Virus record (IMG/VR): IMGVR_UViG_3300042923_000281
Span: 186,001 to 250,000 of that record
Strand: one strand, 5' to 3'
DNA: 64,000 nucleotides
In this document: piece after piece, positions 20,484-63,549 of the stretch
Numbering within the stretch: the stretch's first letter is position 1
Layout of the letters: every line of letters begins with the position of its first letter
Position numbers and translations under genes: made by a program
The notes under the pieces: generated by a model
What the model saw: the letters and a program-made list of their open reading frames with translations, nothing else
Database searches by the model: none
What the model was told of the DNA's origin: nothing

Positions 20484-20867
20484 TTATGCACGAAACTCTG
20501 TGGCAGACATTGTTGGTGCATCCACAATCTGTTCGATGACATCGTATCGTCCTCGGTGGAGGAGTAACGCGATCATCGACAGCTTGCCCTTATCGCCCGG
20601 CGTTTGTGCCTGTAGCGAAGAACCGAATCGACTGATGACTCTTTCCATGAGAGAAGCGTACTTCTTCTCAATGATGGTCACCTTCATCGACTCGATCAGG
20701 GCAAGTAGTGGGATCTGTGCTTCGTCCGCCTCTAATGTGCGGATCTTCTCTGTACCCAACTCCATCGCGTGGCTGAATGACTTCCCAATGCCCATGAACT
20801 GAGCCGTTAGGTCAGCATTGTCATCGAAAGCCCCACGGAATGAAGGATGAAACAGGTAGTAATGCAT
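20484..20867 (-). CDS. Hypothetical protein
   Basis: 127 aa, SD AGGAG, followed by a UUCG hairpin. Confidence 0.6.
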   Translation of the reverse strand: MHYYLFHPSFRGAFDDNADLTAQFMGIGKSFSHAMELGTEKIRTLEADEAQIPLLALIESMKVTIIEKKYASLMERVISRFGSSLQAQTPGDKGKLSMIALLLHRGRYDVIEQIVDAPTMSATEFRA

Positions 20868-21104
20868 GTAGCGCTCCTAGTGTGTGCTGCTTCCCCAAGC
20901 AACGTGGTGCGGCATAACTGCCCGCCTGCCTTGAAAGACAAACGGGCAGCTAGAGGCTTTGTCGGTCACTGTTCGACCGAGTCACATGTCGCGGCTGGCA
21001 TGAGCCAGATCGTACAACAGTCCATCCGGGTAACACTCAGGCATCTACTCAGACGGACCTCGAGTAGAGACTGCTCACTGGGTGTGCACCCCCATGAGAT
21101 GTGT

Positions 21105-21350
21105 TCAGTTGCAGTTCATCGGAATGGGCGGGTTGAACACTTCAGTGGCCACGTATCGGCTACTGACGTTACCCAGTCCATCTTCCCGAAGAACTACGAT
21201 ACCTTTGGAGCGGAGCAAATACGGCAGCGGTCCCATGTACAAATCCTCCAGTGGAGGACAGTACCCTTCCATCTCACCGTGAAACTCCATGAGAGGAGGG
21301 GGTGGGCCTGCTTCTAAGCGCCGTCTACGGGCGCCTTTTCGATTGCACAT
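21105..21350 (-). CDS. Small hypothetical protein at the 3' end of the tRNA/ncRNA array
   Basis: SD AGGAG 7 nt before the ATG at 21350. Confidence 0.45.
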   Translation of the reverse strand: MCNRKGARRRRLEAGPPPPLMEFHGEMEGYCPPLEDLYMGPLPYLLRSKGIVVLREDGLGNVSSRYVATEVFNPPIPMNCN

Positions 21351-21372
21351 GCTCAAACTCCTGTATAAAAGA

Positions 21373-21486
21373 CAGTGAAGCCGTTCTCCTCTCGTGTCCG
21401 GGACTTTTCCCTCATCCTGAGGACTATGCTCCCTGTTCGCCTTACGAGGGTTACTTAGAGCTCGGCTAACGAGTACAGCTTCACTG
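21373..21486 (-). ncRNA. Putative structured ncRNA
   Basis: 12-bp closing stem CAGTGAAGCTGT/ACGGCTTCACTG with internal hairpins; non-coding. Confidence 0.5.
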
Positions 21487-21562
21487 GCGCGCTTTGAATC
21501 AACCAGCGGGACGGCGTCCGCCTACACCCTACGCGCCGCGCAGGAATGCCACTGATTGAAAA

Positions 21563-21677
21563 GGGTCGTCCTGGGGAGACTCAAACTCCCGACCGCTGCC
21601 ACGTTGTTAGGCCCAAGTCCCTCGGAAGGGAGTATGGGCCTGAAAAGGCAGTGCTCTATCAACTGAGCTACAGGACC
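21563..21677 (-). ncRNA. tRNA-like RNA with a 39-nt hairpin insertion in the anticodon loop (pseudo/intron-containing tRNA, Glu-UUC if spliced)
   Basis: GGTCCTG acceptor, GCTC/GAGC D arm, CTGCC/GGCAG anticodon stem around a 46-nt loop, GGGAG-TTTGAGT-CTCCC T arm; G1:G72 mismatch; ends ACCC. Confidence 0.75.
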
Positions 21678-21681
21678 GAAA

Positions 21682-21757
21682 TGGCTCCACGACCTGGACT
21701 CGAACCAGGGACACTACGGTTAACAGCCGTATGCTCTACCAACTGAGCTATCGCGGA
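21682..21757 (-). tRNA. tRNA-Asn(GTT)
   Basis: Full cloverleaf, anticodon loop CTGTTAA, encoded CCA. Confidence 0.95.
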
Positions 21758-21761
21758 ATGT

Positions 21762-21858
21762 GCTCACTGCTGGGCTATACCCAGATCCCCTGCGCTGCCA
21801 ATCCCATTCGCTTCGCCTTGAAGGGGCTTGCGGGATCGGCTGCCAATGGGCAGTGAGC
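21762..21858 (-). ncRNA. Putative structured ncRNA with acceptor/T-arm-like 8+5 stack
   Basis: GCTCACTG/CAGTGAGC stem next to CTGGG-TATAG-CCCAG; internal GCCGATCCC/GGGATTGGC stem. Confidence 0.5.
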
Positions 21859-21863
21859 GGTTT

Positions 21864-21986
21864 ATCAACATCTTCAAGTAGATTTCACCGTACCGTCGGC
21901 TGTGATGTTACTTTCTACTTGCCTACCTTTCGGCTGATTCCCTGCATCCAGGCTCACGCTTTAACTGGATACTTGAAGATGTCGAC
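21864..21986 (-). ncRNA. Putative structured multibranch ncRNA
   Basis: 17-bp closing stem GTCGACATCTTCAAGTA/TACTTGAAGATGTTGAT; internal TCCAG/CTGGA and GCC-GAAA-GGT hairpins. Confidence 0.55.
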
Positions 21987-21989
21987 AAC

Positions 21990-22068
21990 TGGAAGGGGCA
22001 TCTGGATTCGAACCAGAGAATGACAGGATCAAAACCTGTTGCCTTAGGCCAGACTTGGCTACACCCCT
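21990..22068 (-). tRNA. tRNA-Gln(TTG)
   Basis: Cloverleaf, anticodon loop TTTTGAT, TTCGAAT T loop, encoded CCA; A1-U72 and U73. Confidence 0.9.
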
Positions 22069-22108
22069 AAATGCTTGGGACGTCACTCCCGTGTTGCAAT
22101 GTAGCGTT

Positions 22109-22297
22109 GAACGCTTCCCCTTATGTTCCGTTCTCTCTGAGGCGGGACTCGAACCCGCAACGGACATGAGCTCTGATGCCCTAGGGCCGCACTCATTCCA
22201 CACCAACGGACAGGCAGCCACAATGGACTTAGGGTTGTTGGACCGAAGCCCTCACCCTCGGGTATACCAATTCCCCCACTCGTGAGAGGAAGCGTTC
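22109..22297 (-). ncRNA. Large tRNA-like RNA: Leu-type D arm and perfect T arm flanking about 95 nt of extra hairpins, no anticodon loop
   Basis: TG-GGG-GAATTGGTATA-CCC D arm, GCGGG-TTCGAGT-CCCGC T arm, CTCTC..GAG/CTC..GAGAG acceptor, outer GAACGCTTCC/GGAAGCGTTC stem. Confidence 0.7.
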
Positions 22298-22302
22298 GAA
22301 CA

Positions 22303-22379
22303 TGGCGGCTCCAAGGGGACTTGAACCCCTGACCCCCGGCGTGACAGGCCGGTGCTCTAACCAGCTGAGCTATGGAACC
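22303..22379 (-). tRNA. tRNA-Asp(GTC)
   Basis: Full cloverleaf, anticodon loop CTGTCAC, G73 followed by CCA. Confidence 0.95.
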
Positions 22380-22386
22380 TAGAAGA

Positions 22387-22474
22387 TGGTGGAGAGAGAA
22401 GGATTCGAACCTTCGAAGTGCGGTCGCACGTCAGATTTACAGTCTGATCCCTTTGACCACTCGGGAACCTCTCC
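22387..22474 (-). tRNA. tRNA-Tyr(GTA)
   Basis: Full cloverleaf with long variable arm, anticodon loop CTGTAAA, ACCA end. Confidence 0.95.
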
Positions 22475-22482
22475 TAATAGGG

Positions 22483-22581
22483 TGGAAAGGCCGTCGCCAT
22501 TAGCCGCGATGGCGATAACGCCGATCCGTTCGCTGCTCAAAGGCTGCATGGATCACGGCGGCGGAGGCGACGGCCTTTCCA
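22483..22581 (-). ncRNA. Putative structured ncRNA
   Basis: Perfect 16-bp closing stem TGGAAAGGCCGTCGCC/GGCGACGGCCTTTCCA with internal stems; first element after the promoter. Confidence 0.55.
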
Positions 22582-22647
22582 AACGCTCGAAGCCTAGGAC
22601 GTTTTTCGCCTACAACCGTTTAAGGGGTAAGGGACAAAGGCTCTTCA

Positions 22648-22678
22648 CATAGACTACGTCCCTCGTGTAATTTTTTAC
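22648..22678 (-). promoter_or_regulatory. Putative phage promoter for the tRNA/ncRNA array (GTAAAAAA-N13-GTAGTCTATG)
   Basis: Same architecture repeated at 23736..23766; TATG resembles the phiKZ nvRNAP start motif. Confidence 0.55.
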
Positions 22679-22749
22679 ACGATTACAAGGACTTACTTGG
22701 AAAGCAGGCATAAACGCCGTGCATCACACACGGCGCTATGCGGGGAACG

Positions 22750-23592
22750 TTACACGAGACGACGGTTGCCGTCAGCCAGGTGCACTTCGATTTCGATCTG
22801 GAAGTCTTCGCTGAACGAGGAGGTCACGTGAGTGATACCACGCTGTGCATCGAGGCCGATGTCGAACAACAGCTCATCACCGATGTCGCCCGAGATGCCG
22901 AAGCCACGAACCATCTTCTCAACACGCACGGTAGCGTCGTCGATTGGATCGCCGTTCTGATTGAACACGCTGATCGCGCCGACCGGGATGTTGTAGATGG
23001 TGCCGGTGTAGCAGCAGGCGTCGATCTGACCTTCCAGCGCCTTGAAGATGCGCGGCATGATGTCGAAGCGAGTGCCGTTGGCTACCGAGAAACGGATCTT
23101 GGCTTTGTGTTCCACGCGAGCTTCTGGCAGCAGCAGTTCCAGACGCTGAGTCAGGACGGTGTCCAGCTCGTGCATCAGTTGCAGTTGCTTTTGTTGTAGG
23201 GCCAACTGGTGAATGTCCAGCGTTGGGAACTTGTCCAGGAACGCTTGACGCTCGGGAGCACGGTCGTCAACTTCAGCCGCCTTCTCGTCCTGGATGTCCA
23301 GGAAGGTACGCAGCTTGTTGACGCGGTCGTAGTTCTCAGCACGCTCGCCCTTGAGGCGCTGAATGAATGGGGGCAGATCAGAAGCATCACCGATAGCGAT
23401 GTACGCTTTCTCGAACGTTTCCACTGGCGAGAGGCTTACGTAGCCGTCTTCGTATTCGACGACGTAGACTTCCTCTTCCATGTTGGGATGGTTGCCGCCG
23501 ACTGCACGGGTTTCAGCAGCGAGGCTGCGGGTCATCTTGGCAGCGCGAACGATCTTGGTGCCAGTGTAGTGTTGGTAGGTTGGAAGCGACAT
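22750..23592 (-). CDS. Multidomain protein, candidate immune-signal sponge fusion
   Basis: N-terminal YTGTK..YEDGYVSLSP..FEKAY domain, then a crAss001_48-like helical domain (QRLKGE..KLRTFL..QLQLM..VLTQRL), then an extra C-terminal domain. Confidence 0.55.
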   Translation of the reverse strand: MSLPTYQHYTGTKIVRAAKMTRSLAAETRAVGGNHPNMEEEVYVVEYEDGYVSLSPVETFEKAYIAIGDASDLPPFIQRLKGERAENYDRVNKLRTFLDIQDEKAAEVDDRAPERQAFLDKFPTLDIHQLALQQKQLQLMHELDTVLTQRLELLLPEARVEHKAKIRFSVANGTRFDIMPRIFKALEGQIDACCYTGTIYNIPVGAISVFNQNGDPIDDATVRVEKMVRGFGISGDIGDELLFDIGLDAQRGITHVTSSFSEDFQIEIEVHLADGNRRLV

Positions 23593-24205: not shown

Positions 24206-25090
24206 TTACTTCAGTTGGTAGTCTTTGACGATCTTACCGCCGACACCGGCGTTAACGACCATGGGGTTGATCCAGATGGTTTTACCGGATCGTTTATAAG
24301 TACGGTCATGGCCCCGGCGATCATGCTCGCGGCTCTGACGACGTTCACCACACGGACCAGTCTCAGTCCGGCCAGCGCTGACGATGCGTTCTGACTTGTT
24401 GACTACCAACACACGGTAGCTGTCATACGGCAAGGCTTTCTTGCGCTGTTCGGTGAAGGTCAACTTCTTGGCAGGAATCTCCTGCTCAGAGATGTTGCTG
24501 AAAGCAAAGGCTTCGCACAGCTCACACAGGGCCTTGATTGGACCTCGCATGGTTGCACCCGCCAGCTTCTCAAACCACTCCTTGCTCAGGCCAACGTCGT
24601 TGGTCAGGGTGCAAGGCAGTATGCCGCTTTCAAGCGCCTCGAACATCGGGCCCTTCTCTGCGGGCATCTTGCAGATGAACGGGGCACTGATCCATGAGCT
24701 TTGATCGGGTACGTGACTGACCACCGTGATCTCAATCGGACCCGAGCCTTCCTGAGTGGCGATCACAATGACCTTGTCCCGGTAACAGTGACCTGAGGTC
24801 ATTAGCTTCAGCACAGGGTCGTCGATGTGGTGCAAGGCGGCTTCAGCAGCCATGTCGGCCAGATAGTCTTCCTTGTGAAAATACTCAATCACCACACACG
24901 GGTAAGGCAACCGGATCTTCTCCGGCAAGCAACGCAGGTTGTTGTCCAGTACGCGTCCACCTTCCGGCAGGGCGAACTTGGGGGCTTTCATAGCGGCTTG
25001 AAGTGTCACCGCCAACTCTTTGTTTCCGGCAATCCGCTTCGAGCGTTTGAAGAACTCCATCGCTGTACGGAAATAGTTAGGACCTTCCAT
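24206..25090 (-). CDS. Hypothetical protein with C-terminal H-x-RRGH-x-R motif
   Basis: 294 aa; REHDRRGHDRTYKRSGKTIW resembles a motif common in uncharacterised phage proteins. Confidence 0.6.
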   Translation of the reverse strand: MEGPNYFRTAMEFFKRSKRIAGNKELAVTLQAAMKAPKFALPEGGRVLDNNLRCLPEKIRLPYPCVVIEYFHKEDYLADMAAEAALHHIDDPVLKLMTSGHCYRDKVIVIATQEGSGPIEITVVSHVPDQSSWISAPFICKMPAEKGPMFEALESGILPCTLTNDVGLSKEWFEKLAGATMRGPIKALCELCEAFAFSNISEQEIPAKKLTFTEQRKKALPYDSYRVLVVNKSERIVSAGRTETGPCGERRQSREHDRRGHDRTYKRSGKTIWINPMVVNAGVGGKIVKDYQLK

Positions 25091-25538
25091 TCTTTCTCCT
25101 GCTGTCGCCTAAGGCAACTGTGATGTCTGCCTCGATGAACGGATAGATGGCGCGGTAGACGTACTGAATGTCTTCCTCCCAATCCAATCCGCCGTGGCCA
25201 CAACCCATGGGTGGTAAGACGATGCGTCCAAGTCTGTGCCGGCTGGCCAAGACTGCTATCTTGTTGATGTGATGAACGACCAAGCTACGCGGAGAGGCAT
25301 CTCGCCAGTCCAGTTTGGTCGGCACCAACAGGTAACGCATGTCTTCGTGTTTATACGAGATGATGTTGCCCGGTTCGATGGTTGGATACATCTTGCGGTA
25401 GTGCTTGTGAAGCCCTGGGACCGTGTTACGGGCGGTTCGAGCCACACCGGCTCCCATTGCCCCGACCAGATTGATCGTGATCACACGTGTATCAGCAGGG
25501 ACGTCAAATAGATCCTGCTCCACGATCTTTAATGACAT
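25077..25538 (-). CDS. Macrodomain (ADP-ribose processing, DarG/TARG1-like)
   Basis: INLVGAMGAGVA, PTK..W and LPPMGCGHGGLDW motifs. Confidence 0.8.
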   Translation of the reverse strand: MSLKIVEQDLFDVPADTRVITINLVGAMGAGVARTARNTVPGLHKHYRKMYPTIEPGNIISYKHEDMRYLLVPTKLDWRDASPRSLVVHHINKIAVLASRHRLGRIVLPPMGCGHGGLDWEEDIQYVYRAIYPFIEADITVALGDSRRKNGRS

Positions 25539-25998
25539 GTTCAACCGCCTCGGTAAAGCAGCTTGCTAAGAAGGCTGCGGTGATGGGGGTATGAGACGGG
25601 ACAGTGATGGTCCAGACATGGCCCACGTGCTGGAACTCCCGTGCTACCAATCGTAGCCGATGTTTAAGGTGGATCTGACTGACCAATGAATCGATGTGAG
25701 GGTTACCGGACACGAATCCAGTGAACGTCATCACGAGATCCGCTAAGAAGTCTAACCCCTCCTCAGTCACGAAGAATGCACAGTAGAACTGCTTCTTCGT
25801 TTTGCCTTCCTCATGATGCGACGCACAGCAGTCTGTGGTCATCACACCGGGTTGTTCGTTCAGCAATGCCACTGCCTGTTTCAGTTCAGGGTCAACGAGG
25901 CTGTAGGGTGCCGAAGGATCGTTGAGGAGCTGTACCTTACGGTAATCATCCAATGCTTCTTGAACATTGGTGAGCTTGCCAGCAGCAGATAATTTCAT
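25504..25998 (-). CDS. Hypothetical protein with TYW3-like motif
   Basis: VDPELKQAVALLN..GVMTTDCCASH resembles the D..LN....TTSSC.G motif of the TYW3 fold; early promoter upstream. Confidence 0.45.
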   Translation of the reverse strand: MKLSAAGKLTNVQEALDDYRKVQLLNDPSAPYSLVDPELKQAVALLNEQPGVMTTDCCASHHEEGKTKKQFYCAFFVTEEGLDFLADLVMTFTGFVSGNPHIDSLVSQIHLKHRLRLVAREFQHVGHVWTITVPSHTPITAAFLASCFTEAVEHVIKDRGAGSI

Positions 25999-26530: not shown

Positions 26531-28129
26531 TTAGACTGCCGCGCCTTCTACTTGGCTGATCTTCAGTGCGGCTAGGGTGAAAAAAACGTAACCGATGTCG
26601 ATTGGGATCAAGTACGGATGCGTTTGATCTTCAGGCTCCTTCTGGCACGCCGGGCACTTGACTTTCGGCAGGCCGATGTAGGAGACCGTCGACTTCTTGA
26701 TCCACTCGAGGATCTCGTTGGTGAACTTGTCGCCCACCTCAGGATCTTCAGACAGCATCTCGAGGATGCGGTCCTTGTTGACCAGGTCATCGTAGATGAT
26801 CGGCGCTGCATCAGGATCGAGCGCATGCTCGAAATGATCGACCCAATGGCCGTACTGACGCAGGTTCGTCAACGCACCACTGCGCATGATGTGTCGCATG
26901 CGGTCCATCTCAGAGAGACGGGCGCCGAACGCATCGTTGGTCGCTTTGGAGATACCGTCGACCCACACGTGGCCGCCATCGATCTGGGCTGCCAGCGAAG
27001 TCACCTTCAGCACAGCAGTCAGGCCCTTGCCCAGCGGAACACGTTTCTCGTAGAACGGGAACTCCGCTTGGTATTCAGCCAGCCACTTCGCATCACGCTT
27101 GGCGCTACGAGAGGCCATCTTCAGCGCTTGGCTTGGGGTGATCTTGGCGCGGTCAACAAAGCCCATACGAGCAAAGTTGATCAGCACTTCGTCGACGTGC
27201 TTGCACTTGTCTGGATCGGCCACGCATGGCTGACGCAGTGGGTAGCCGTCCGGGTACATCGCACAGGCCAGACCCCACATCACTTGCTGGTAGTCACGGC
27301 TGCGGATCACTTCCATCAGCTCGTCAACGGTATCGCCGGTTTCGAAGGCGTAGTTGACGGAGACGATGTGCTCCAGCGCGAATCGCATGTAGGTTTCAAC
27401 GGTGTAGACTTCCACCGAGGAGAACACCATGCCGTTCGAGGAACGACCGAGGTTCATCTTCTCCATGCGGGTCTTCTGTTCGAAGTCCAGCAGCGCTTGG
27501 ATGGTCGGGGCACGGAATGTCACCCACAGACCAGTGTTCCACAGCGGCACCTGCACCATCGAGCCTTGGCCGAAGGTTGCACGGATTGCCATGACCGGGT
27601 CTTTCATGTTGGCAGGCTTGACCTTACCAGCACCCAGACGGGTCTCGTTGTGCAGCACGGTGTTGTGCCAATCGCCTTCACCGTCGATGCCGTCGAAGTA
27701 CATGTCCTGCCACACGGCAGAAAGCGTACGGGACAGGTTCACCAGACGACGATCTTCCGGGGAGAGGGACTCAGCCTTTTCTTTACTGAGTTCGTTCAGA
27801 CCACGGTGATCCATGATCATTGCCATCTCGTCCATGCCCACTTTCAAAGCCACGAGGCCAGGACGTGCAGGGTCGAGTGACTGACGCTTGAACATTGGTT
27901 CGGTCAGGGTGACGTGAGGGTTCGGTTTATCGAACTGATCCCACAACCCTTCGATTTCCATGGTGACTTCAGGTGTTTGTTCTGCTGGAGGCTTAGCAGT
28001 GGCCGCTGCTGTGGTGGCTTGGGCAAACGCATCAGCGCTCTGAGAGCTGTCAACGTTTGGCACCAAGTTGGACGTATCCAACTCCACCTCATCCATTCCT
28101 TCATTCTGGGGTTTCTGGTCGTCGCTCAT
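26531..28129 (-). CDS. Conserved protein (phiKZ gp77-like), probable tail/baseplate-hub assembly chaperone
   Basis: 532 aa with FRAPT, C..C and CPAC Zn motifs reminiscent of T4 gp26/gp51-type chaperones; slippery site near the 3' end. Confidence 0.55.
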   Translation of the reverse strand: MSDDQKPQNEGMDEVELDTSNLVPNVDSSQSADAFAQATTAAATAKPPAEQTPEVTMEIEGLWDQFDKPNPHVTLTEPMFKRQSLDPARPGLVALKVGMDEMAMIMDHRGLNELSKEKAESLSPEDRRLVNLSRTLSAVWQDMYFDGIDGEGDWHNTVLHNETRLGAGKVKPANMKDPVMAIRATFGQGSMVQVPLWNTGLWVTFRAPTIQALLDFEQKTRMEKMNLGRSSNGMVFSSVEVYTVETYMRFALEHIVSVNYAFETGDTVDELMEVIRSRDYQQVMWGLACAMYPDGYPLRQPCVADPDKCKHVDEVLINFARMGFVDRAKITPSQALKMASRSAKRDAKWLAEYQAEFPFYEKRVPLGKGLTAVLKVTSLAAQIDGGHVWVDGISKATNDAFGARLSEMDRMRHIMRSGALTNLRQYGHWVDHFEHALDPDAAPIIYDDLVNKDRILEMLSEDPEVGDKFTNEILEWIKKSTVSYIGLPKVKCPACQKEPEDQTHPYLIPIDIGYVFFTLAALKISQVEGAAV

Positions 28130-28141
28130 GATCCTGCCTTA

Positions 28142-28525
28142 TTACGCAGTTTTCTTTTCGGAACGAACAAGATCACTGATCAAATCCATCAGCTCACCGG
28201 AGTGAGGGGAGACGGTTGCAGTGGTCTGTTCAATGAAATCATAATAATCACCACCGGCCTTGAGCAGCACAGGGTGATTAGGATTATTCAACACGGCTGA
28301 CGTGATGTCGGCGCTGTGTTTGGCTTTGATCCCGTCGAGACGTTTCTTCATCTCTTCCAGATCACGTTTGATGATGCGGGTCAACTCAGCGACACGCTTG
28401 CCGTTCGGAGATTTACTCCAATCGTAGCGAGCTGCGTCTTGAGTGGTTGTAGCGAAACTGTGCAGTAGTCTCAAGGACTGTTGGTGAAGGGACTGCAACC
28501 CCTGACTCCGTGTAAGCTTGGACAT
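28142..28525 (-). CDS. Hypothetical protein (gp78-like)
   Basis: 127 aa helical ORF. Confidence 0.55.
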   Translation of the reverse strand: MSKLTRSQGLQSLHQQSLRLLHSFATTTQDAARYDWSKSPNGKRVAELTRIIKRDLEEMKKRLDGIKAKHSADITSAVLNNPNHPVLLKAGGDYYDFIEQTTATVSPHSGELMDLISDLVRSEKKTA

Positions 28526-28622
28526 GATCTTTTAAACCCCAGTAATATGGAAAATGGACTGGCCAATTATTTGTACTTTACTCATAGTAGGTCGGCTAAA
28601 CTTTTTTTATTAGGAAAACACA

Positions 28623-29459
28623 ATGTTCCAAGAACTCTCTGACATTCTTCTGGACAATGTGCACCCTGCCATCTACAGTGGAATGGTGACACTTACTCGG
28701 GCACTGGAAAAGCATCAAGCTGTCCAGTACAAGGAGCGCATCATTCAATTGCGGATGGATGCGAATAACCGTGAACCACTCACCTTGACCGATGAGGCGA
28801 TCTCGATCGTCTACGACCAGGTGCGTGCCCTGACCCAACAGATGAAAATCCAGTTGGAGTTGGACACCTTGAGCATGGACAAGCTTTCCATGATCCTGGA
28901 GTGTCTGACCTTTACACCTAGCGATAATGATTCAGAGTATCTGGCAGCTTTGGATGCTGGAGAGGACTCTGAGGACACGCTGCACGACATTCTGGCCATC
29001 TACATGCAGTGTGAGCCCATCGAATTGATGGAGTACGTCACAGGTGTGGACGGTGCGGTCATCGTGGCCATTCGTGAGACCGTGGAACGTAACCTCAGCT
29101 ACCTCGAGAAGGCAGAAGAGGGTGTGCAAGATGCGGTCGTGCTGCTGAACAAGTTCCAGACCCTCGTTGGGGACAAACTGACGGTGGGCATGGAGTCGTT
29201 GCAGGCAGGTACTGAGGTAGGTGCGTCGGCTGAAGAGCTGGTGAACCAATCTCGCAGTCGTCTGGCTGACTTGCCGGCTGAAGACTTGGCAGATCAGTTG
29301 CTCTCCATTGCGATTATCGCCAAGACCCCACGCGATGCCCTGCAAGACGAAGTCATGTTCTTCGCAGAGAACATCATCCATGACCCGTTCATGGTTCAGA
29401 AGGCTTACAAGCGCGTTACCAAGCGCCTGAGTGAGTTGCCACCGGAGAATACGCCGTGA
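28623..29459 (+). CDS. Conserved hypothetical/virion protein (gp79-like)
   Basis: 278 aa, SD AGGA, overlaps the vRNAP subunit gene (GTGA). Confidence 0.6.
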   Translation: MFQELSDILLDNVHPAIYSGMVTLTRALEKHQAVQYKERIIQLRMDANNREPLTLTDEAISIVYDQVRALTQQMKIQLELDTLSMDKLSMILECLTFTPSDNDSEYLAALDAGEDSEDTLHDILAIYMQCEPIELMEYVTGVDGAVIVAIRETVERNLSYLEKAEEGVQDAVVLLNKFQTLVGDKLTVGMESLQAGTEVGASAEELVNQSRSRLADLPAEDLADQLLSIAIIAKTPRDALQDEVMFFAENIIHDPFMVQKAYKRVTKRLSELPPENTP

Positions 29460-60385: not shown

Positions 60386-60964
60386 TCAGTCAAACAAACG
60401 ATCAATGGAAAGGCTGGTCATGATGGGCAATGAAGCAATGTGCACACTCCGAGGTTGTACGAAAGCCTCAGGCATGGGCAGCAGCCCTGGGATCACCCGA
60501 CGAATCACGGTACCATCAGGCAGAACGCGGGTGAGTGGTTCAGACTCACGTTCCTTGGCCCATTGCTCCGCCTGTAAGCGCGCCTGAGCCTGCCGGACAG
60601 CTTTGTCCACCACACGTTGCGCTTGGGCCTCAGGAGCCATCATACCGGCTTGGAAGAGCGCCTGTAGAGGAGTCTCGTAGACGGTACCGCTGCGGTGGGT
60701 GAAGTCCTGCTTGAACGTTACGTCATCACGGAAGGTCACCATCCCATGAGGCCAGACGATCAACCAATGCCCGCCTTCTGGCTTGAAGAGTGCCATCATC
60801 TCAGGGTCGATCTGATGACGCTCTTTTGGGTTGAAGCCGTACGCCATGTACGACGGTTCATCGCCGAACATCCAATCCGTACGGTCAACCCGCTGGATCT
60901 GGAACGCATGCACCTTAGACCACGGTGTGATTCTAAGGGTTGAGACGGTCTCGTTGGGCTTCAT
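60386..60964 (-). CDS. Hypothetical protein
   Basis: 192 aa, SD GAGGAG. Confidence 0.55.
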   Translation of the reverse strand: MKPNETVSTLRITPWSKVHAFQIQRVDRTDWMFGDEPSYMAYGFNPKERHQIDPEMMALFKPEGGHWLIVWPHGMVTFRDDVTFKQDFTHRSGTVYETPLQALFQAGMMAPEAQAQRVVDKAVRQAQARLQAEQWAKERESEPLTRVLPDGTVIRRVIPGLLPMPEAFVQPRSVHIASLPIMTSLSIDRLFD

Positions 60965-61286
60965 CGGCGCTCCTCAAAGCTCTTAGGGTTTCAGTCAGCA
61001 ACTTAGCCACCGGGACACTCAAGCCCGTGTGGCGACGGATCGCTGTCTCTGCCAGTACGTACACCGATACACCGCTGATAACAGACTGCGTGACAGCCAC
61101 ATCCATCAGTTCAGCGAATACTTCAGCCACACACCGAGGTTTGAACGGCTCGGCAATGAGGGCTGAGGTGACGCAGTGTGCGCTGTAGTCGCCGGTGAGA
61201 TCGCCCCAAGTGGTCAACAATTGGGGCTTTCTCTCAGGGAACTTGAGGATCTTGCACTCAGTCGGCAAGCCAGTCCTCTCCATCAT
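60933..61286 (-). CDS. Hypothetical protein
   Basis: ORF overlapping the polymerase 3' end; start placed at MMERTG. Confidence 0.4.
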   Translation of the reverse strand: MMERTGLPTECKILKFPERKPQLLTTWGDLTGDYSAHCVTSALIAEPFKPRCVAEVFAELMDVAVTQSVISGVSVYVLAETAIRRHTGLSVPVAKLLTETLRALRSADEAQRDRLNP

Positions 61287-63549
61287 CTTCTTCGTACTCC
61301 TCATCGTCATCCTCGTCGATCTTGAGGATGATACTGTTTGCGTCTGTTGGGTCAGGTTGCAGGTTGACTTCGCCACGTGGGGTGTAGATGTCGCTGATCA
61401 AGCGGACGTACTTGCTGTCCACTTGGAAGATCCCCAGCGTCTCGAGGATCATGTAGAAGGACTCCAGGATCTCGTAGGTGAGACGACGGACGTCGATCAT
61501 GGCCATGACCTCGTCTGGCATCCCGATGCCCGAGAGGATCGACAGAGGCAGCATGAGCGTGCCCATCTTGTCCTTGCCAGCCCGTTGGCAGTACTCGCGC
61601 AGACGTTCACCCATGTCCTTGTCCGTCTTGTCCACGTGAGCCATCCAGTCCTGCATGTCGGTCTTGTTATTGATCGCCAGCGGAACCTTAATCACGGAGA
61701 AGGGTGGGCTTTCTACATGGCCGTACTTCGGTGCAAAGACGTGCTCCCAGAAGTGATAGTGACGGTAGTTCGTCTTCTCACGGAACGGGTCTTCCTTGTT
61801 CATGTTCGGGTACGATTCCTGAACCTGTGCAGACTTCAGGTAACGGTGTTCCCCGGACTTGATCGAGGTGTAGATGTCTTGCTCCAAACGCCACACCAGC
61901 AGGTACAGCTCTTCCAACGTGAACTGACGGTTCTCATCCGCGCGGGTCATGACTTCCTTCATGAACGCCTTGGCCTGCTTGATGATTGCTACCGGTACAG
62001 TGGAGGAACGCAGGGCTACGCCTTTGATCTCCATCTCGTAGTCACGGTACACACGGCCTTCACGAGCACTCATGAACGCGTAGTAGTGCTTCGCCCGGCT
62101 GGTCAAGGTAAAGACTGGGAAGGCGTACTCGTTCTTCATGGTCAGACGGTGCAGGTCTTCCTGAATCACCCCCATGTTTGCCGAGAGCTTCGCCAGTACG
62201 TGCACGATACATTGGCAAGCCACGTACGTCGTGGTGTACCAGATCCCGTCACCTTCACGGCTACGCACGTCACTGCCGGTGTACCACGTTACCCACTCTT
62301 GGGTGGTGAAGATCGTGGAGTCGGTGTCAGACGCCAGTACCACACGGCGCAAGATGCCCTTGACGTTTGCCACGGTTGGAGCCAACAGCACAGGCGTGAG
62401 GAACACACGGATGAACTGGAAGTAGTCCTGCAAGGTGTTCTGGATGTTCGCTGAGCTCTTGGCAACCAAGGCCAGCTCTGCGGTCATCCCTTTCTCCTTC
62501 ATGGAGTCAAAGTCTTCACCACGGGTGATGTCAGCGTTGAGGTACGTGGCCAACATCTTGGTGTCGTCATCGAACTTCTTGCTGCGCAGCATCTCGAAAC
62601 CGTCTTCCACTTCCATGGAGTCGTTACGAGGCTCGTGCTTGATGATGCGGTCCATGAACCCACGGACAAACCCATCGTTCAGCTGAGCAATGTGGTACAG
62701 GTCGCCCGTGTACATCACAATGGCCCGTTCCAGCGGGGTCAGCTTCTCAAGCAGATCAACGATCTTCTGGAAGTTAGCCTCGTTGCGCCAGTACAGGTCG
62801 GTCGAACGCTTGATGCACGCTGCGGCTTGCTCGGTGGTTGGGTACACGAAGCCGCAGTTGTCCATGGCCTGACGGAACTCCTCGTGCGGTTGGCTCTTCA
62901 CCAGCGCGAGGATATTCGCTATCGTTATCTTGGGGGACCAATAGTGTCTTGATCCCGCCAAGAGCTTCTCGTTACTGGCGTTACCGTAACCGGTGGCCGA
63001 ACGGCACATGGAGGTCAGGCTGGAGTGGCCCGATTTGACGTACAGGATGTTGCCGGTGAAGCCGTGCATGCCAGACAGCGAGTTAATCGCGATCTTCTTG
63101 GCGTTCTGCTCGGCGTCCTTGATCTTCTCAAGGGTCTCGTCCCCTGCTACCTGAGCAAGGAACATCTCGTTCTTGGCTTTCTTACGACCTGCGATACCCG
63201 ATTCAACGAACTTGGCCGAAGGGGACTTCAACACCTTCGGGTTCTCGTAGCACACCATCGATGGACTGATGATGCGGTTGCTCTCGGTCACCGTCTTGAC
63301 GTAGCTGAGCAGGGTCATTTCAGTCTTGACCCGGTTGCCCGGTGATTCTTGTTTCAGGACCAGCATGTTCGGATCACGAAGCGGGTACTTCCCACCTCGG
63401 GAGAGTGTACGCTTCAGGAAAGCCAAGCATTTGTCTTCTGGCTGACCGGTCATCCGATGCAGGTAATGGGTATTCTGTTCGAAGTACCCCTTTAGCAGAT
63501 CGAGGTCACGGACATAGGCTTCCTTCGGAAGTACAAACGGATTTTCCAT
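61258..63549 (-). CDS. Split family-B DNA polymerase, catalytic subunit (phiKZ gp50-like)
   Basis: Motif B Q.A.K..INSLSG, motif C SDTDS, K.Y and IKGV; start placed at MENPF. Confidence 0.88.
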   Translation of the reverse strand: MENPFVLPKEAYVRDLDLLKGYFEQNTHYLHRMTGQPEDKCLAFLKRTLSRGGKYPLRDPNMLVLKQESPGNRVKTEMTLLSYVKTVTESNRIISPSMVCYENPKVLKSPSAKFVESGIAGRKKAKNEMFLAQVAGDETLEKIKDAEQNAKKIAINSLSGMHGFTGNILYVKSGHSSLTSMCRSATGYGNASNEKLLAGSRHYWSPKITIANILALVKSQPHEEFRQAMDNCGFVYPTTEQAAACIKRSTDLYWRNEANFQKIVDLLEKLTPLERAIVMYTGDLYHIAQLNDGFVRGFMDRIIKHEPRNDSMEVEDGFEMLRSKKFDDDTKMLATYLNADITRGEDFDSMKEKGMTAELALVAKSSANIQNTLQDYFQFIRVFLTPVLLAPTVANVKGILRRVVLASDTDSTIFTTQEWVTWYTGSDVRSREGDGIWYTTTYVACQCIVHVLAKLSANMGVIQEDLHRLTMKNEYAFPVFTLTSRAKHYYAFMSAREGRVYRDYEMEIKGVALRSSTVPVAIIKQAKAFMKEVMTRADENRQFTLEELYLLVWRLEQDIYTSIKSGEHRYLKSAQVQESYPNMNKEDPFREKTNYRHYHFWEHVFAPKYGHVESPPFSVIKVPLAINNKTDMQDWMAHVDKTDKDMGERLREYCQRAGKDKMGTLMLPLSILSGIGMPDEVMAMIDVRRLTYEILESFYMILETLGIFQVDSKYVRLISDIYTPRGEVNLQPDPTDANSIILKIDEDDDEEYEEDDGEDWLAD

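What the first reader, a model, noticed from the sequence alone, without database searches (positions are those of the whole stretch)
21563..21677. tRNA with a 39-nt hairpin inserted at the canonical 37/38 intron position
Seen: the anticodon stem CTGCC/GGCAG encloses TTTTCA-[GGCCCATACTCCCTTCCGAGGGACTTGGGCCTAACAACG]-T. Removing 21602..21640 restores a 7-nt loop UU-UUC-AU (Glu). The insert is too short for a group I/II intron, and I see no clear bulge-helix-bulge motif. The G1:G72 mismatch, TTTGAGT T loop, non-Glu D arm and CCC end argue against normal decoding. Inference: either a protein-spliced short tRNA intron, which would be unusual in a bacterial host, or an unspliced tRNA mimic or decoy.
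Basis: partly seen in the sequence, partly recalled or inferred. Interest (0 to 1): 0.75.

Follow-up and report, generated by a model that had tools for sequence, protein, structure and literature searches.

The report
Phage tRNA-like gene with hairpin insert
A jumbo phage's tRNA operon holds a well-conserved tRNA-shaped gene whose anticodon loop is filled by a small hairpin; relatives show it is not a glutamate tRNA with a standard intron, and it is probably a tRNA mimic or an oddly interrupted valine tRNA.

Summary
On the minus strand at 21677-21563 lies a canonical tRNA body (Rfam 48.2 bits) with 46 nt between the strands of its anticodon stem. It is the last gene of a Tyr-Asp-Gln-Asn operon in a 277-kb phiKZ-like phage.

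Eight relatives in the same clade carry it. So do the cultured Ralstonia phages FLC1-1B, FLC4-3B, RP12 and RP31 and Burkholderia phage FLC9, where it is unannotated. Compensatory changes occur in the anticodon stem, T stem and hairpin base, and at the tertiary 19:56 pair.

The Glu/37-38 reading fails. The "UUC" triplet becomes UCA, UUA, AUC, UAC or CAU in relatives.

Conserved features:
- U33.
- An A:U-closed hairpin of about 11-12 bp.
- An NCCA-like tetranucleotide after the hairpin (AACA in this clade).
- A-C placed where A35-C36 of tRNA-Val would sit.

There is no bulge-helix-bulge, group I core or known ribozyme. This phage encodes no RtcB, Rnl1/2, EndA or CCA-adding enzyme, and no protein is specific to carriers. 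Every clade has an abnormal acceptor end.

Best reading (about 0.4): an unspliced tRNA mimic. Main rival (about 0.27): tRNA-Val with a non-canonical intervening sequence. No read-level RNA data could be obtained.

The parts
21563..21677 (-). The whole interrupted tRNA-like gene (115 nt including the CCC end)
   Evidence: Rfam RF00005 at 48.2 bits. ARAGORN intron mode. Own covariance model R1 at 133.9 bits.
21671..21677 (-). Acceptor stem 5' strand GGUCCUG. G1 faces G72, a purine-purine mismatch.
   Evidence: In this clade 1:72 is G.G three times, A.G four times and G.A once, never a standard pair.
21653..21668 (-). D arm GCUC-AGUUGAUA-GAGC, with A at position 19 instead of G
   Evidence: A19 occurs only together with U56 (window, L012, L019).
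21647..21651 (-). Anticodon stem 5' strand CUGCC
   Evidence: Pairs with 21596-21600. Compensatory CCGUC/GACGG in L016 and L018, ACGUC/GACGU in FLC1-1B, UCCCC/GGGGA in FLC9.
21642..21646 (-). 5' single strand UUUUC. The first two nucleotides correspond to positions 32-33.
   Evidence: Length (4-7 nt) and sequence vary among relatives; only the second nucleotide is kept (U in 11 of 12 sequences).
21609..21641 (-). Inserted hairpin: AGGCCCA/UGGGCCU base closed by an A:U pair, an internal loop, a UCCCU/AGGGA stem and a UCCG loop
   Evidence: Folds. Compensatory changes in the base, and an apical part that varies in sequence and length (24-36 nt) with UUCG or GAAA loops.
21605..21608 (-). AACA directly after the hairpin, the counterpart of GCCA, UCCA or ACCA in other lineages (NCCA-like)
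   Evidence: the third and fourth nucleotides after the hairpin are C and A in all 12 sequences. The second is C outside most of this clade.
21601..21604 (-). ACGU. The A-C sits at -4/-3 from the stem, where A35-C36 would lie.
   Evidence: A-C is invariant in all 12 sequences although the tail length is 7, 8 or 9 nt.
21596..21600 (-). Anticodon stem 3' strand GGCAG
21574..21590 (-). T arm GGGAG-UUUGAGU-CUCCC (U56)
   Evidence: Pair 51:63 is G:C, U:A or C:G among relatives.
21563..21573 (-). Acceptor 3' strand CAGGACG, discriminator A73, then CCC instead of CCA
   Evidence: ACCC is invariant in the 8 clade members. The four neighbouring tRNA genes all encode CCA.
21682..22474 (-). Upstream genes of the same operon: tRNA-Tyr(GUA) 22387-22474, Asp(GUC) 22303-22379, Gln(UUG) 21990-22068 and Asn(GUU) 21682-21757. 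Asn ends 4 nt before the interrupted gene.

Best explanation
It is a tRNA-shaped non-coding RNA of a phiKZ-like jumbo phage. It is not a glutamate tRNA and probably not a decoding tRNA at all.

Shown:
- It lies in the phage's tRNA operon, 4 nt behind tRNA-Asn.
- It keeps a complete class-I tRNA core: all four stems, U8, A14, G15:C48, G53:C61 and the 19:56 elbow pair. Purifying selection on this core is visible as compensatory changes.
- In place of a 7-nt anticodon loop it carries a conserved module. The module is 4-7 variable nucleotides, an A:U-closed hairpin of about 11-12 stacked pairs, an NCCA-like tetranucleotide, and A-C two nucleotides before the stem.

Inferred:
- The RNA is cut out of the operon transcript like a tRNA, by RNase P at the 5' end and host 3' trimming, and stays unspliced.
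- The tRNA body gives it stability and lets tRNA-binding proteins dock.
- The extra arm resembles an acceptor/T-arm minihelix with its own discriminator-CCA. This arm, plus the exposed A-C, is the working part.
- The RNA acts as a bait or competitor for a host factor that recognises tRNA. Candidates are an anticodon-loop nuclease or other tRNA-directed defence enzyme, RNase P, or ValRS. The insert occupies the site where known anticodon nucleases cut (33/34 and 34/35).

The target is not identified.
For: 1. ARAGORN calls relatives Glu, SeC(tca), Stop(tta), Val(aac), Val(tac), Met(cat) and Leu(gag).
2. Every lineage has an abnormal acceptor end. This clade has a purine-purine 1:72 mismatch and an invariant ACCC. 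FLC1-1B and FLC4-3B have two mismatches at 4:69 and 5:68. FLC9 has a 2-nt bulge. RP12 ends A-UCA and has a T-stem mismatch. The neighbouring tRNAs are canonical and encode CCA.
3. Position 37 would be a pyrimidine in FLC1-1B, FLC4-3B, RP12 and FLC9.
4. Nucleotides that would belong to an intron (the A:U closing pair and the NCCA-like motif) are conserved across lineages, and the hairpin covaries.
5. G000 has no RtcB, Rnl2, Rnl1, EndA or CCA-adding enzyme. It has no homologue of the FLC1-1B ligase or the RP12 RtcB.
6. No ORF of G000 is shared with FLC1-1B, RP12 and FLC9 yet absent from the non-carriers DT01 and Noxifer, apart from DUF7941 paralogues.
7. The same clusters hold other tRNA-derived chimeras. 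An unrelated viral contig, L130, has a tRNA body with CCA whose anticodon loop is replaced by a 15-bp hairpin.
8. An RNA-labelled wastewater run holds 0.79 of the sampled 31-mers of 21440-21700 but only 0.21 of 20500-23500. About 30% of possible words in the short stretch touch the insert, so some unspliced words must be present.
Against: - No read-level RNA data exist.
- The invariant A-C at the A35-C36 position, U33, A73 and G45 fit a valine tRNA and are most simply explained by decoding and ValRS recognition.
- The Ralstonia and Burkholderia carriers do encode an Rnl2-family ligase, and two of them also RtcB. Hosts may supply RtcB too.
- No target protein is identified, and no carrier-specific partner was found.
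- The 31-mer evidence could reflect DNA carry-over or an unspliced precursor.
- The lineages number only about 4-5 independent ones, so the invariants rest on few events.
Confidence: 0.4

Rival explanations
1. It is a genuine tRNA-Val gene (anticodon NAC, most likely UAC) with a short non-canonical intervening sequence. The insert lies between position 33/34 or 34/35 and A35. It is removed by host enzymes, or by a phage enzyme not recognisable by sequence, and the exons are religated to give a decoding tRNA.
For: - A-C is invariant at -4/-3 from the stem in all 12 sequences, although tail length and every other loop nucleotide change.
- U is the second loop nucleotide in 11 of 12.
- Joining the first 3 loop nucleotides to the last 4 gives UAC in 7 of 8 clade members (AAC in L018), UAC in FLC1-1B and FLC9, and CAC in FLC4-3B and RP12. 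All are valine anticodons.
- A73 and G45 are valine identity elements.
- The tRNA core is complete and under selection.
- The gene sits in a tRNA operon.
- The 5' part of the insert varies freely in length and sequence, as intron sequence would.
- FLC1-1B, FLC4-3B, RP12 and FLC9 encode an Rnl2-family ligase.
- Lak megaphages were reported to have enigmatic tRNA introns.
Against: - No known bacterial pathway removes such an insert. There is no bulge-helix-bulge, no group I core and no ribozyme hit.
- The window clade has no ligase, endonuclease or CCA enzyme, and no carrier-specific protein exists.
- No sequence is conserved at either putative junction.
- Position 37 is a pyrimidine in four sequences.
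- Acceptor stems are irregular, whereas ValRS needs a regular helix. The CCC end is invariant. G20 is absent.
- The A-C can also be read as the start of a second ACCA-like motif (RP12 has ACCA-U-ACCA, FLC9 has GCC-ACCA).
Confidence: 0.27
2. The inserted hairpin with its NCCA-like tail is an acceptor/T-arm minihelix recognised by host RNase P, as a built-in external guide sequence would be. RNase P cuts at its 5' side, inside the anticodon loop. The gene is then a device that releases a small CCA-tailed minihelix, tRNA halves, or both. These products, not the whole RNA, would be the active species.
For: - The hairpin is closed by A:U in 12 of 12 sequences.
- It is followed by N-(C/A)-C-A in 12 of 12: GCCA, UCCA or ACCA in five lineages and AACA in most of the window clade.
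- The stacked length of about 11-12 bp equals the acceptor plus T stem, and the irregularity lies 6-7 bp from the end.
- From established knowledge, hairpins with a 3' RCCA tail are model substrates of bacterial RNase P.
- Only host enzymes are needed, which fits the lack of carrier-specific proteins.
- A Lak phage intron was reported to look like a tRNA inside a tRNA.
Against: - Most of the window clade has AACA, which lacks C74.
- There is no T-loop on the hairpin.
- The nucleotides at -1/+1 show no RNase P preference.
- Cutting would leave loops of 7-10 nt if religated, so this does not yield a normal tRNA.
- Continued selection on the whole outer tRNA, including the anticodon stem, is not obviously needed for a mere release device.
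- There is no experimental support.
Confidence: 0.15
3. One reading: a tRNA-Glu(UUC) with a 39-nt intron at the canonical 37/38 position, removed by a protein endonuclease and a ligase.
For: ARAGORN intron mode gives this call for the window, L012, L013 and L019. Removing 21602-21640 leaves a 7-nt loop.
Against: - The triplet is UCA in L001/L002, UUA in L016, AUC in L018, UAC in FLC1-1B and CAU in FLC4-3B at the same place.
- Apart from the putative anticodon loop, the Glu identity elements I recall for E. coli tRNA-Glu (G1:C72, U2:A71, the augmented D helix, absence of 47; from memory) are absent.
- There is no bulge-helix-bulge and no EndA, RtcB or Rnl.
Confidence: 0.04
4. A dead tRNA gene: a hairpin, such as a small repeat or a remnant of a larger element, landed in the anticodon loop of a tRNA-Val gene, and the gene is decaying.
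For: The acceptor-end defects differ from lineage to lineage. The gene is absent from close relatives (DT01, L020's phage).
Against: - Compensatory double changes occur in the anticodon stem (2 pairs within the clade, 4 of 5 across lineages), the T stem, the hairpin base and the 19:56 tertiary pair.
- 96% of pair cells are paired across 8 sequences, against at most 50% in slid controls.
- The gene is retained at the same site in phages whose neighbouring protein is only 56% identical, and in phages of other host genera.
Confidence: 0.04

Closest known systems
Enigmatic short introns in tRNA genes of Lak megaphages (Devoto et al. 2019, PMC6784885)
   Same: These are phage tRNA genes with short inserts in the anticodon loop and no known splicing route. 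One insert was described as itself looking like a tRNA, and its true position was offset from the predicted canonical one.
   Different: The phage group (Prevotella megaphages, 26% GC) and the tRNAs (Thr, Tyr) differ. No homology was tested here. The Lak introns were reported as nearly identical between genomes. Here the hairpin top is hypervariable and only an A:U-closed base plus the NCCA-like tail are kept.
Archaeal and eukaryal protein-spliced tRNA introns (bulge-helix-bulge, EndA/Sen, RtcB or Trl1)
   Same: A short insert in the anticodon loop of an otherwise normal tRNA.
   Different: No two 3-nt bulges separated by a 4-bp helix can be drawn. The conserved anticodon-like nucleotides place the insert 5' of position 35, not at 37/38. 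The phage has no EndA and no ligase. The host is bacterial.
Group I introns in bacterial tRNA genes (for example cyanobacterial tRNA-Leu(UAA), inserted between U34 and A35; from established knowledge)
   Same: A bacterial-type setting, with the insertion point in or next to the anticodon, possibly the same 34/35 site.
   Different: The insert is 33-46 nt against roughly 200 nt or more. No catalytic core and no Rfam intron hit was found. The last insert nucleotide is A, G, U or C rather than a conserved G.
tRNA-like non-coding RNAs: bacterial and phage YrlA (Y RNA-like), the stable species 1 and 2 RNAs of the T4 tRNA cluster, and the engineered tRNA scaffold used to express RNAs in the anticodon position (from established knowledge)
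   Same: A tRNA body used as a stable, correctly processed carrier for another RNA module, encoded among tRNA genes and not used for decoding.
   Different: The Rfam YrlA score is 21 bits against a gathering score of 69. No Rsr/TROVE protein is present in the phage. The topology is the reverse of YrlA: ends at the acceptor stem and the extra arm closed. No homology to the T4 RNAs was tested.
Valine-accepting tRNA-like structures of plant RNA viruses (TYMV type)
   Same: A viral tRNA mimic that presents A35-C36-like nucleotides and is not used in decoding.
   Different: Those sit at the 3' end of an RNA genome, use a pseudoknotted acceptor and end in CC(A). This one is a free-standing gene with a true cloverleaf, and in this clade it ends in CCC.

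Membership tests
Canonical tRNA (Rfam RF00005) | Cloverleaf with conserved core nucleotides, scoring above the gathering threshold | tested here: met
   48.2 bits against 29. U8, A14, G15:C48, G53:C61 and A58 are present. Stems covary.
Canonical tRNA (Rfam RF00005) | 7-nt anticodon loop | tested here: not met
   46 nt lie between the stem strands. Relatives have 37-48 nt.
Canonical tRNA (Rfam RF00005) | Paired 1:72 and a CCA end, as in the other tRNA genes of this operon | tested here: not met
   G1.G72 and ACCC. Both features are kept in the clade.
Protein-spliced tRNA intron (bulge-helix-bulge type) | Two 3-nt bulges flanking a 4-bp helix at the splice sites | tested here: not met
   By inspection of the folds. 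The 5' strand has only 4-7 nt and no complementarity to the 3' strand is conserved.
Protein-spliced tRNA intron (bulge-helix-bulge type) | Splicing endonuclease (EndA, PF01974) and a ligase (RtcB or Rnl) available | tested here: not met
   Absent from G000. The host genome is unknown, so a host RtcB could not be tested.
Group I intron in a tRNA gene | Catalytic core of about 200 nt or more, recognisable by covariance model, and a terminal G | tested here: not met
   The insert is 39-41 nt. No intron family appears at E <= 1. The last nucleotide varies.
tRNA-Glu(UUC) | UUC anticodon conserved among orthologues | tested here: not met
   UUC, UCA, UUA, AUC, UAC and CAU occur at the same place.
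tRNA-Val | A35 and C36 | tested here: inconclusive
   A-C is at the right distance from the 3' strand of the stem in 12 of 12 sequences. It is contiguous with positions 32-34 only if the insert is removed, and an ACCA-like reading is also possible.
tRNA-Val | A73, G45, G20 and a regular acceptor helix | tested here: inconclusive
   A73 and G45 are present. Position 20 is U. The acceptor helix is irregular in most lineages.
tRNA-Val | Aminoacylation with valine and use on the ribosome | not testable with these tools
   Needs charging assays or tRNA-seq.
YrlA / Y RNA-like | A match to the family model and a partner Rsr (TROVE) protein | tested here: not met
   21.1 bits against 69. No TROVE in G000.
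RNase P minihelix substrate | A helix of about 12 bp followed by a single-stranded RCCA | tested here: inconclusive
   An 11-12 bp stack and NCCA are present in five lineages, but AACA in this window. Cleavage itself is not testable here.

The most novel reading that the evidence does not exclude
A new kind of tRNA intervening sequence in bacterial viruses. An acceptor-stem-like minihelix with its own NCCA sits 5' of A35 in a tRNA-Val. It is excised with the help of ordinary host tRNA-end-processing enzymes, with RNase P guided by the intron's own CCA, and the exons are rejoined. This would be a protein- or RNase P-dependent tRNA splicing route that is neither bulge-helix-bulge nor group I, operating in Pseudomonas, Ralstonia and Burkholderia cells.
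Probability: 0.15. Interest if true: 0.9.

Novelty: new variant of a known kind. Interest (0 to 1): 0.62.

Why it matters
Bacteria are not known to splice tRNAs with proteins. Short inserts in phage tRNA genes have so far been reported as an unexplained oddity.

What this family offers:
- It has a defined anatomy and covariation support.
- It occurs in five cultured, plaque-forming jumbo phages of Ralstonia and Burkholderia, where it is unannotated. The question therefore becomes directly testable.

Possible outcomes:
- If the RNA is spliced, it reveals a new processing route.
- If it is not spliced, it is a new tRNA-mimic RNA. It may act against tRNA-directed host defences, since it sits in an operon whose other members (Tyr, Asp, Asn, His, Gln) are the classical targets of anticodon nucleases.
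- Either way, annotation pipelines that read it as tRNA-Glu, tRNA-SeC or a suppressor are misleading.

Tried and rejected
- **Read-level RNA evidence.** Two run searches found RNA-labelled wastewater runs holding the stretch. I did not try again, so only word shares are available.
- **Exact and degenerate DNA patterns in viral contigs.** These gave only the three known relatives.
- **Metagenome scan with the neighbouring protein.** It added nothing new.
- **BLAST of the gene against phage records to fix the isotype.** The 5' half matches Lys, Ile, Asp, Leu, Phe and Met tRNAs and the 3' half one Val tRNA, so this is not decisive.
- **Known splicing or repair enzymes.** RtcB, Rnl2, Rnl1, EndA, TROVE and the CCA-adding enzyme are all absent from G000.
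- **Phylogenetic profile.** I compared all 1198 ORFs of G000 with three carrier and two non-carrier genomes. Only DUF7941 paralogues stood out.
- **Codon usage.** GUA is 13% of Val codons. Without the host genome this is uninformative.
- **Bulge-helix-bulge drawing and pairing between the two single strands of the loop.** No conserved solution was found.
- **CRISPR-repeat mimicry.** The anticodon stem equals, from memory, the stem of the Pseudomonas type I-F repeat. I rejected this because the stem covaries in relatives.
- **Sigma-70 promoter and terminator scan.** Nothing was found on the gene's strand.
- **Broad structural pattern in viral contigs.** It returned many interrupted tRNA genes. 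Most are Ile(UAU) or Tyr(GUA) genes followed by T runs, which I take to be eukaryotic-virus genes. None belongs to this family.

Full report
**Setting**

The window is bases 186001-250000 of a complete 276,978-bp virus record with direct terminal repeats. It has 54% G+C. Its tRNA cluster and a baseplate-hub protein match phiKZ-like jumbo phages. The closest cultured relative is Pseudomonas phage pPa_SNUABM_DT01, at 72% amino-acid identity.

On the minus strand the genes run Tyr(GUA), Asp(GUC), Gln(UUG), Asn(GUU). Four nucleotides after Asn comes the gene in question.

Rfam's tRNA model matches 21677-21566 at 48.2 bits, with a 41-nt insertion in the anticodon loop. ARAGORN finds the gene only in intron mode, as tRNA-Glu(ttc) with a 39-nt intron at position 37. 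The RNA folds into a cloverleaf plus a hairpin at -49 kcal/mol, with z = -2.9.

No other Rfam family, ribozyme or intron matches at E <= 1. The only other hit is a weak YrlA score of 21 bits against a threshold of 69.

**Relatives in the same clade**

The 280-aa protein upstream of the cluster has 15 homologues, at 51-100% identity. Eleven contigs of related phages were fetched.

- Eight carry the interrupted gene directly after tRNA-Asn: L001, its near-identical twin L002, L003, L012, L013, L016, L018 and L019.
- L014, L015 and L017 end before the site.
- L020, the most distant, has a plain tRNA-Ser there.
- DT01 and Noxifer lack the gene.

**Relatives in other host genera**

A more distant version lies in the tRNA clusters of Ralstonia phages FLC1-1B, FLC4-3B, RP12 and RP31 and of Burkholderia phage FLC9. 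GenBank annotates none of these. These share the D arm, the AGGUC variable loop and the hairpin base AGGCCC/GGGCCU with the window gene. They differ in the acceptor stem and in most loop nucleotides.

I count about four to five independent lineages.

**Structure is under selection**

On the eight clade sequences 96.3% of pair cells are standard pairs. With partners slid by 1-3 columns the figure is 37-50%. The covariation score is 0.25, against at most 0.095 in the slid controls.

Double compensatory changes:
- In the anticodon stem: U:A to C:G and C:G to U:A.
- At T-stem pair 51:63: G:C, U:A and C:G.
- In the hairpin base.

Across all lineages, four of the five anticodon-stem pairs and three T-stem pairs change type while staying paired.

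The window, L012 and L019 have A at D-loop position 19 together with U at T-loop position 56. All others have G19 with C56. So the T loop that looked degenerate keeps the elbow pair. This is one evolutionary event, not several.

A decaying pseudogene is therefore excluded.

**The Glu/37-38 reading fails**

The six nucleotides before the hairpin are:
- UUUUCA in five clade sequences.
- UUUCAA in L001/L002.
- UUUUAA in L016.
- UUAUCA in L018.
- AUUACCU(A) in FLC1-1B.
- AUCAUC(A) in FLC4-3B.
- ACCA(A) in RP12.
- AUUU(A) in FLC9.

ARAGORN accordingly calls Glu, SeC, Stop, Val, Val, Met and Leu. A decoding anticodon would not change like this among phages this close.

**What is conserved in the loop**

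1. The second nucleotide after the stem is U in 11 of 12 sequences. This is position 33.
2. The hairpin is always closed by an A:U pair and stacks about 11-12 bp, with an irregularity 6-7 bp from its end. Its top varies in sequence and length (24-36 nt in all) and often ends in UUCG or GAAA.
3. The four nucleotides after the hairpin are N-(C/A)-C-A. They are GCCA in L016 and FLC9, UCCA in FLC1-1B, ACCA in FLC4-3B and RP12, and AACA in the rest of the window clade.
4. A-C is invariant at -4/-3 from the 3' strand of the anticodon stem.

Features 3 and 4 hold independently, although the tail is 7, 8 or 9 nt long.

**Two readings of these invariants**

*The valine reading.* The A-C sits where A35 and C36 sit in a normal loop. 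Joining the first three loop nucleotides to the last four gives UAC in seven of eight clade members and AAC in L018. It gives UAC in FLC1-1B and FLC9 and CAC in FLC4-3B and RP12. All are valine anticodons. A35, C36, A73 and G45 are valine identity elements, and A73 and G45 are present. This would make the gene a tRNA-Val interrupted 5' of position 35, at or near the site of the cyanobacterial tRNA-Leu group I intron and of the cuts made by known anticodon nucleases.

*The minihelix reading.* The hairpin plus NCCA looks like an acceptor/T-arm minihelix with its own discriminator and CCA. The A-C may be the start of a second such motif (RP12 reads ACCA-U-ACCA).

**Against a decoding tRNA**

- Position 37 would be U or C in FLC1-1B, FLC4-3B, RP12 and FLC9.
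- Every lineage has a different defect at the acceptor end:
  - a purine-purine 1:72 mismatch that drifts among G.G, A.G and G.A without ever pairing, plus an invariant ACCC, in the window clade;
  - two mismatches in FLC1-1B and FLC4-3B;
  - a bulge in FLC9;
  - A-UCA and a T-stem mismatch in RP12.
- The neighbouring tRNA genes are regular and encode CCA.

**No machinery for splicing**

- No bulge-helix-bulge can be drawn.
- G000 has no RtcB, Rnl2, Rnl1, EndA, CCA-adding enzyme or TROVE protein.
- The same holds for RtcB and Rnl2 in two sister genomes.
- The Ralstonia and Burkholderia carriers do have an Rnl2-family ligase, and RP12 and FLC9 also have RtcB. G000 has no homologue of either.

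I then compared all 1198 ORFs of G000 with the complete genomes of three carriers (FLC1-1B, RP12, FLC9) and two non-carriers (DT01, Noxifer). Nothing is shared with the carriers and missing from the non-carriers except paralogues of DUF7941, an unrelated expanded family. Any processing must therefore use host enzymes or core phage proteins.

**Expression**

Two searches of public runs found RNA-labelled wastewater libraries that hold the locus. One holds 0.79 of the sampled words of 21440-21700 but only 0.21 of the 3-kb surroundings. That suggests the structured RNAs rather than the whole genome are represented, and that at least some insert-containing words are present. Splicing, cleavage and integrity therefore remain untested.

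**Context**

These clusters hold further tRNA-derived chimeras. An unrelated viral contig has a CCA-ending tRNA body whose anticodon loop is replaced by a 15-bp hairpin.

A broad pattern scan shows that interrupted tRNA genes are common in viral contigs. Most of those are Ile(UAU) or Tyr(GUA) genes followed by T runs, which I take to be eukaryotic-virus genes. None belongs to this family.

The literature search found only the enigmatic introns of Lak megaphages as a precedent. A review notes that nucleus-forming jumbo phages are poor in RNA repair genes.

**Verdict**

The feature is real, conserved and functional as a structured RNA.

| Reading | Probability |
|---|---|
| Unspliced tRNA mimic that presents a minihelix arm and an A-C dinucleotide on a tRNA body | about 0.4 |
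| tRNA-Val with a non-canonical intervening sequence removed by an unknown, mostly host-borne route | about 0.27 |
| Release device cut by RNase P at the inner minihelix | about 0.15 |
| Pseudogene | about 0.04 |

The remainder is unassigned. The mechanism is inferred, not shown. The cultured carriers make the decisive experiments simple.

Noticed in passing
L020:5890-6045, L016:5525-5675, L003:8040-8195 (relatives, 3' of the interrupted gene): A composite RNA of about 155 nt. An outer acceptor stem and D arm are followed by a long stem. That stem encloses, in order, a T-arm-like hairpin, a closed 9-bp hairpin (compensatory between L020 and L003), 'UA' and a second D arm. The outer T arm follows. 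The inner order is that of a circularly permuted tRNA, a YrlA-like topology, sitting in the anticodon position of another tRNA.
   Followed up: partly
window 21490-21555 (-): A conserved element of about 65 nt right after the interrupted gene, present in all relatives. Its inner hairpin changes GGCG-GA-CGCC to CUCG-GA-CGAG in L003. Its folding energy is not better than shuffles.
   Followed up: partly
window 22069-22302 (-) and 21758-21989 (-): Two ORF-free spacers of about 230 nt inside the tRNA operon fold very stably, at -86 and -94 kcal/mol. The first holds a T-arm-like GCGGGUUCGAGUCCCGC. No Rfam family matches.
   Followed up: partly
window 21250-21480 (-): A structured stretch closed by a 12-bp stem (CAGUGAAGCUGU/ACGGCUUCACUG). 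It is conserved in L001 but replaced by tRNA-like pieces in L003.
   Followed up: no
L007:2977-3072 (Noxifer), L021:2263-2340 (pPa_SNUABM_DT01), L025:1355-1492 (FLC9): Further unannotated tRNA-like sequences that standard finders miss. Noxifer has one with a 23-nt anticodon loop and a CCA end. DT01 has one with an acceptor stem and T arm but an aberrant middle. FLC9 has a composite of 138 nt.
   Followed up: no
L025 (Burkholderia phage FLC9, LC667451.1 127968-130409): ARAGORN finds nine tRNA genes here, but the GenBank record lists no tRNA feature in this stretch.
   Followed up: no
window 21682-22474 (-), and the His genes in L001, L012 and L016: The phage's regular tRNAs are Tyr, Asp, Asn and His (the GUN anticodons) plus Gln(UUG). 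From established knowledge these are the target sets of colicin E5-type and zymocin/PrrC-type anticodon nucleases. This suggests the operon serves against tRNA-directed defence.
   Followed up: no
window 21647-21651 and 21596-21600 (-): The anticodon stem CUGCC/GGCAG with its flanking CA and C equals, from memory, the stem of the Pseudomonas type I-F CRISPR repeat. The stem covaries in L016, L018 and FLC phages, so this is probably coincidence.
   Followed up: partly
window 25077-25544 (-): A 155-aa macro-domain protein (Pfam PF01661, E 1e-4; PHROG 335 'phosphatase') lies 3.4 kb upstream of the tRNA operon.
   Followed up: no
window 22750-23592 (-): The 280-aa protein next to the operon matches Pfam PF21825 (crAss001_48-related; shown as 'Sequestin' in precomputed hits). 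It is conserved in the clade at 51-100% identity.
   Followed up: no
G000 135993-145354 (outside the window; locus L104): An array of eight DUF7941 paralogues. It is shared with Burkholderia phage FLC9 but absent from the closest cultured relative DT01.
   Followed up: partly
window 27645-28842 (+) and 60467-61830 (+): ARAGORN intron mode also calls tRNA-Lys with a 1106-nt intron and tRNA-Thr with a 1276-nt intron. The first overlaps the baseplate-hub gene on the other strand. I take both as false positives.
   Followed up: no
L130:3330 region (-), IMGVR_UViG_3300002918_000119: A tRNA body ending in G-CCA whose anticodon loop is replaced by a perfect 15-bp hairpin with a UUCG loop. This is a natural tRNA scaffold in an unrelated viral contig.
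   Followed up: no
L112, L127, L134, L136, L150, L177, L182, L204, L206, L209 and others: Many IMG/VR contigs carry tRNA-Ile(UAU) or tRNA-Tyr(GUA) genes with inserts of 35-49 nt after position 37, followed by runs of T. These look like eukaryotic-type intron-containing genes of giant viruses.
   Followed up: no
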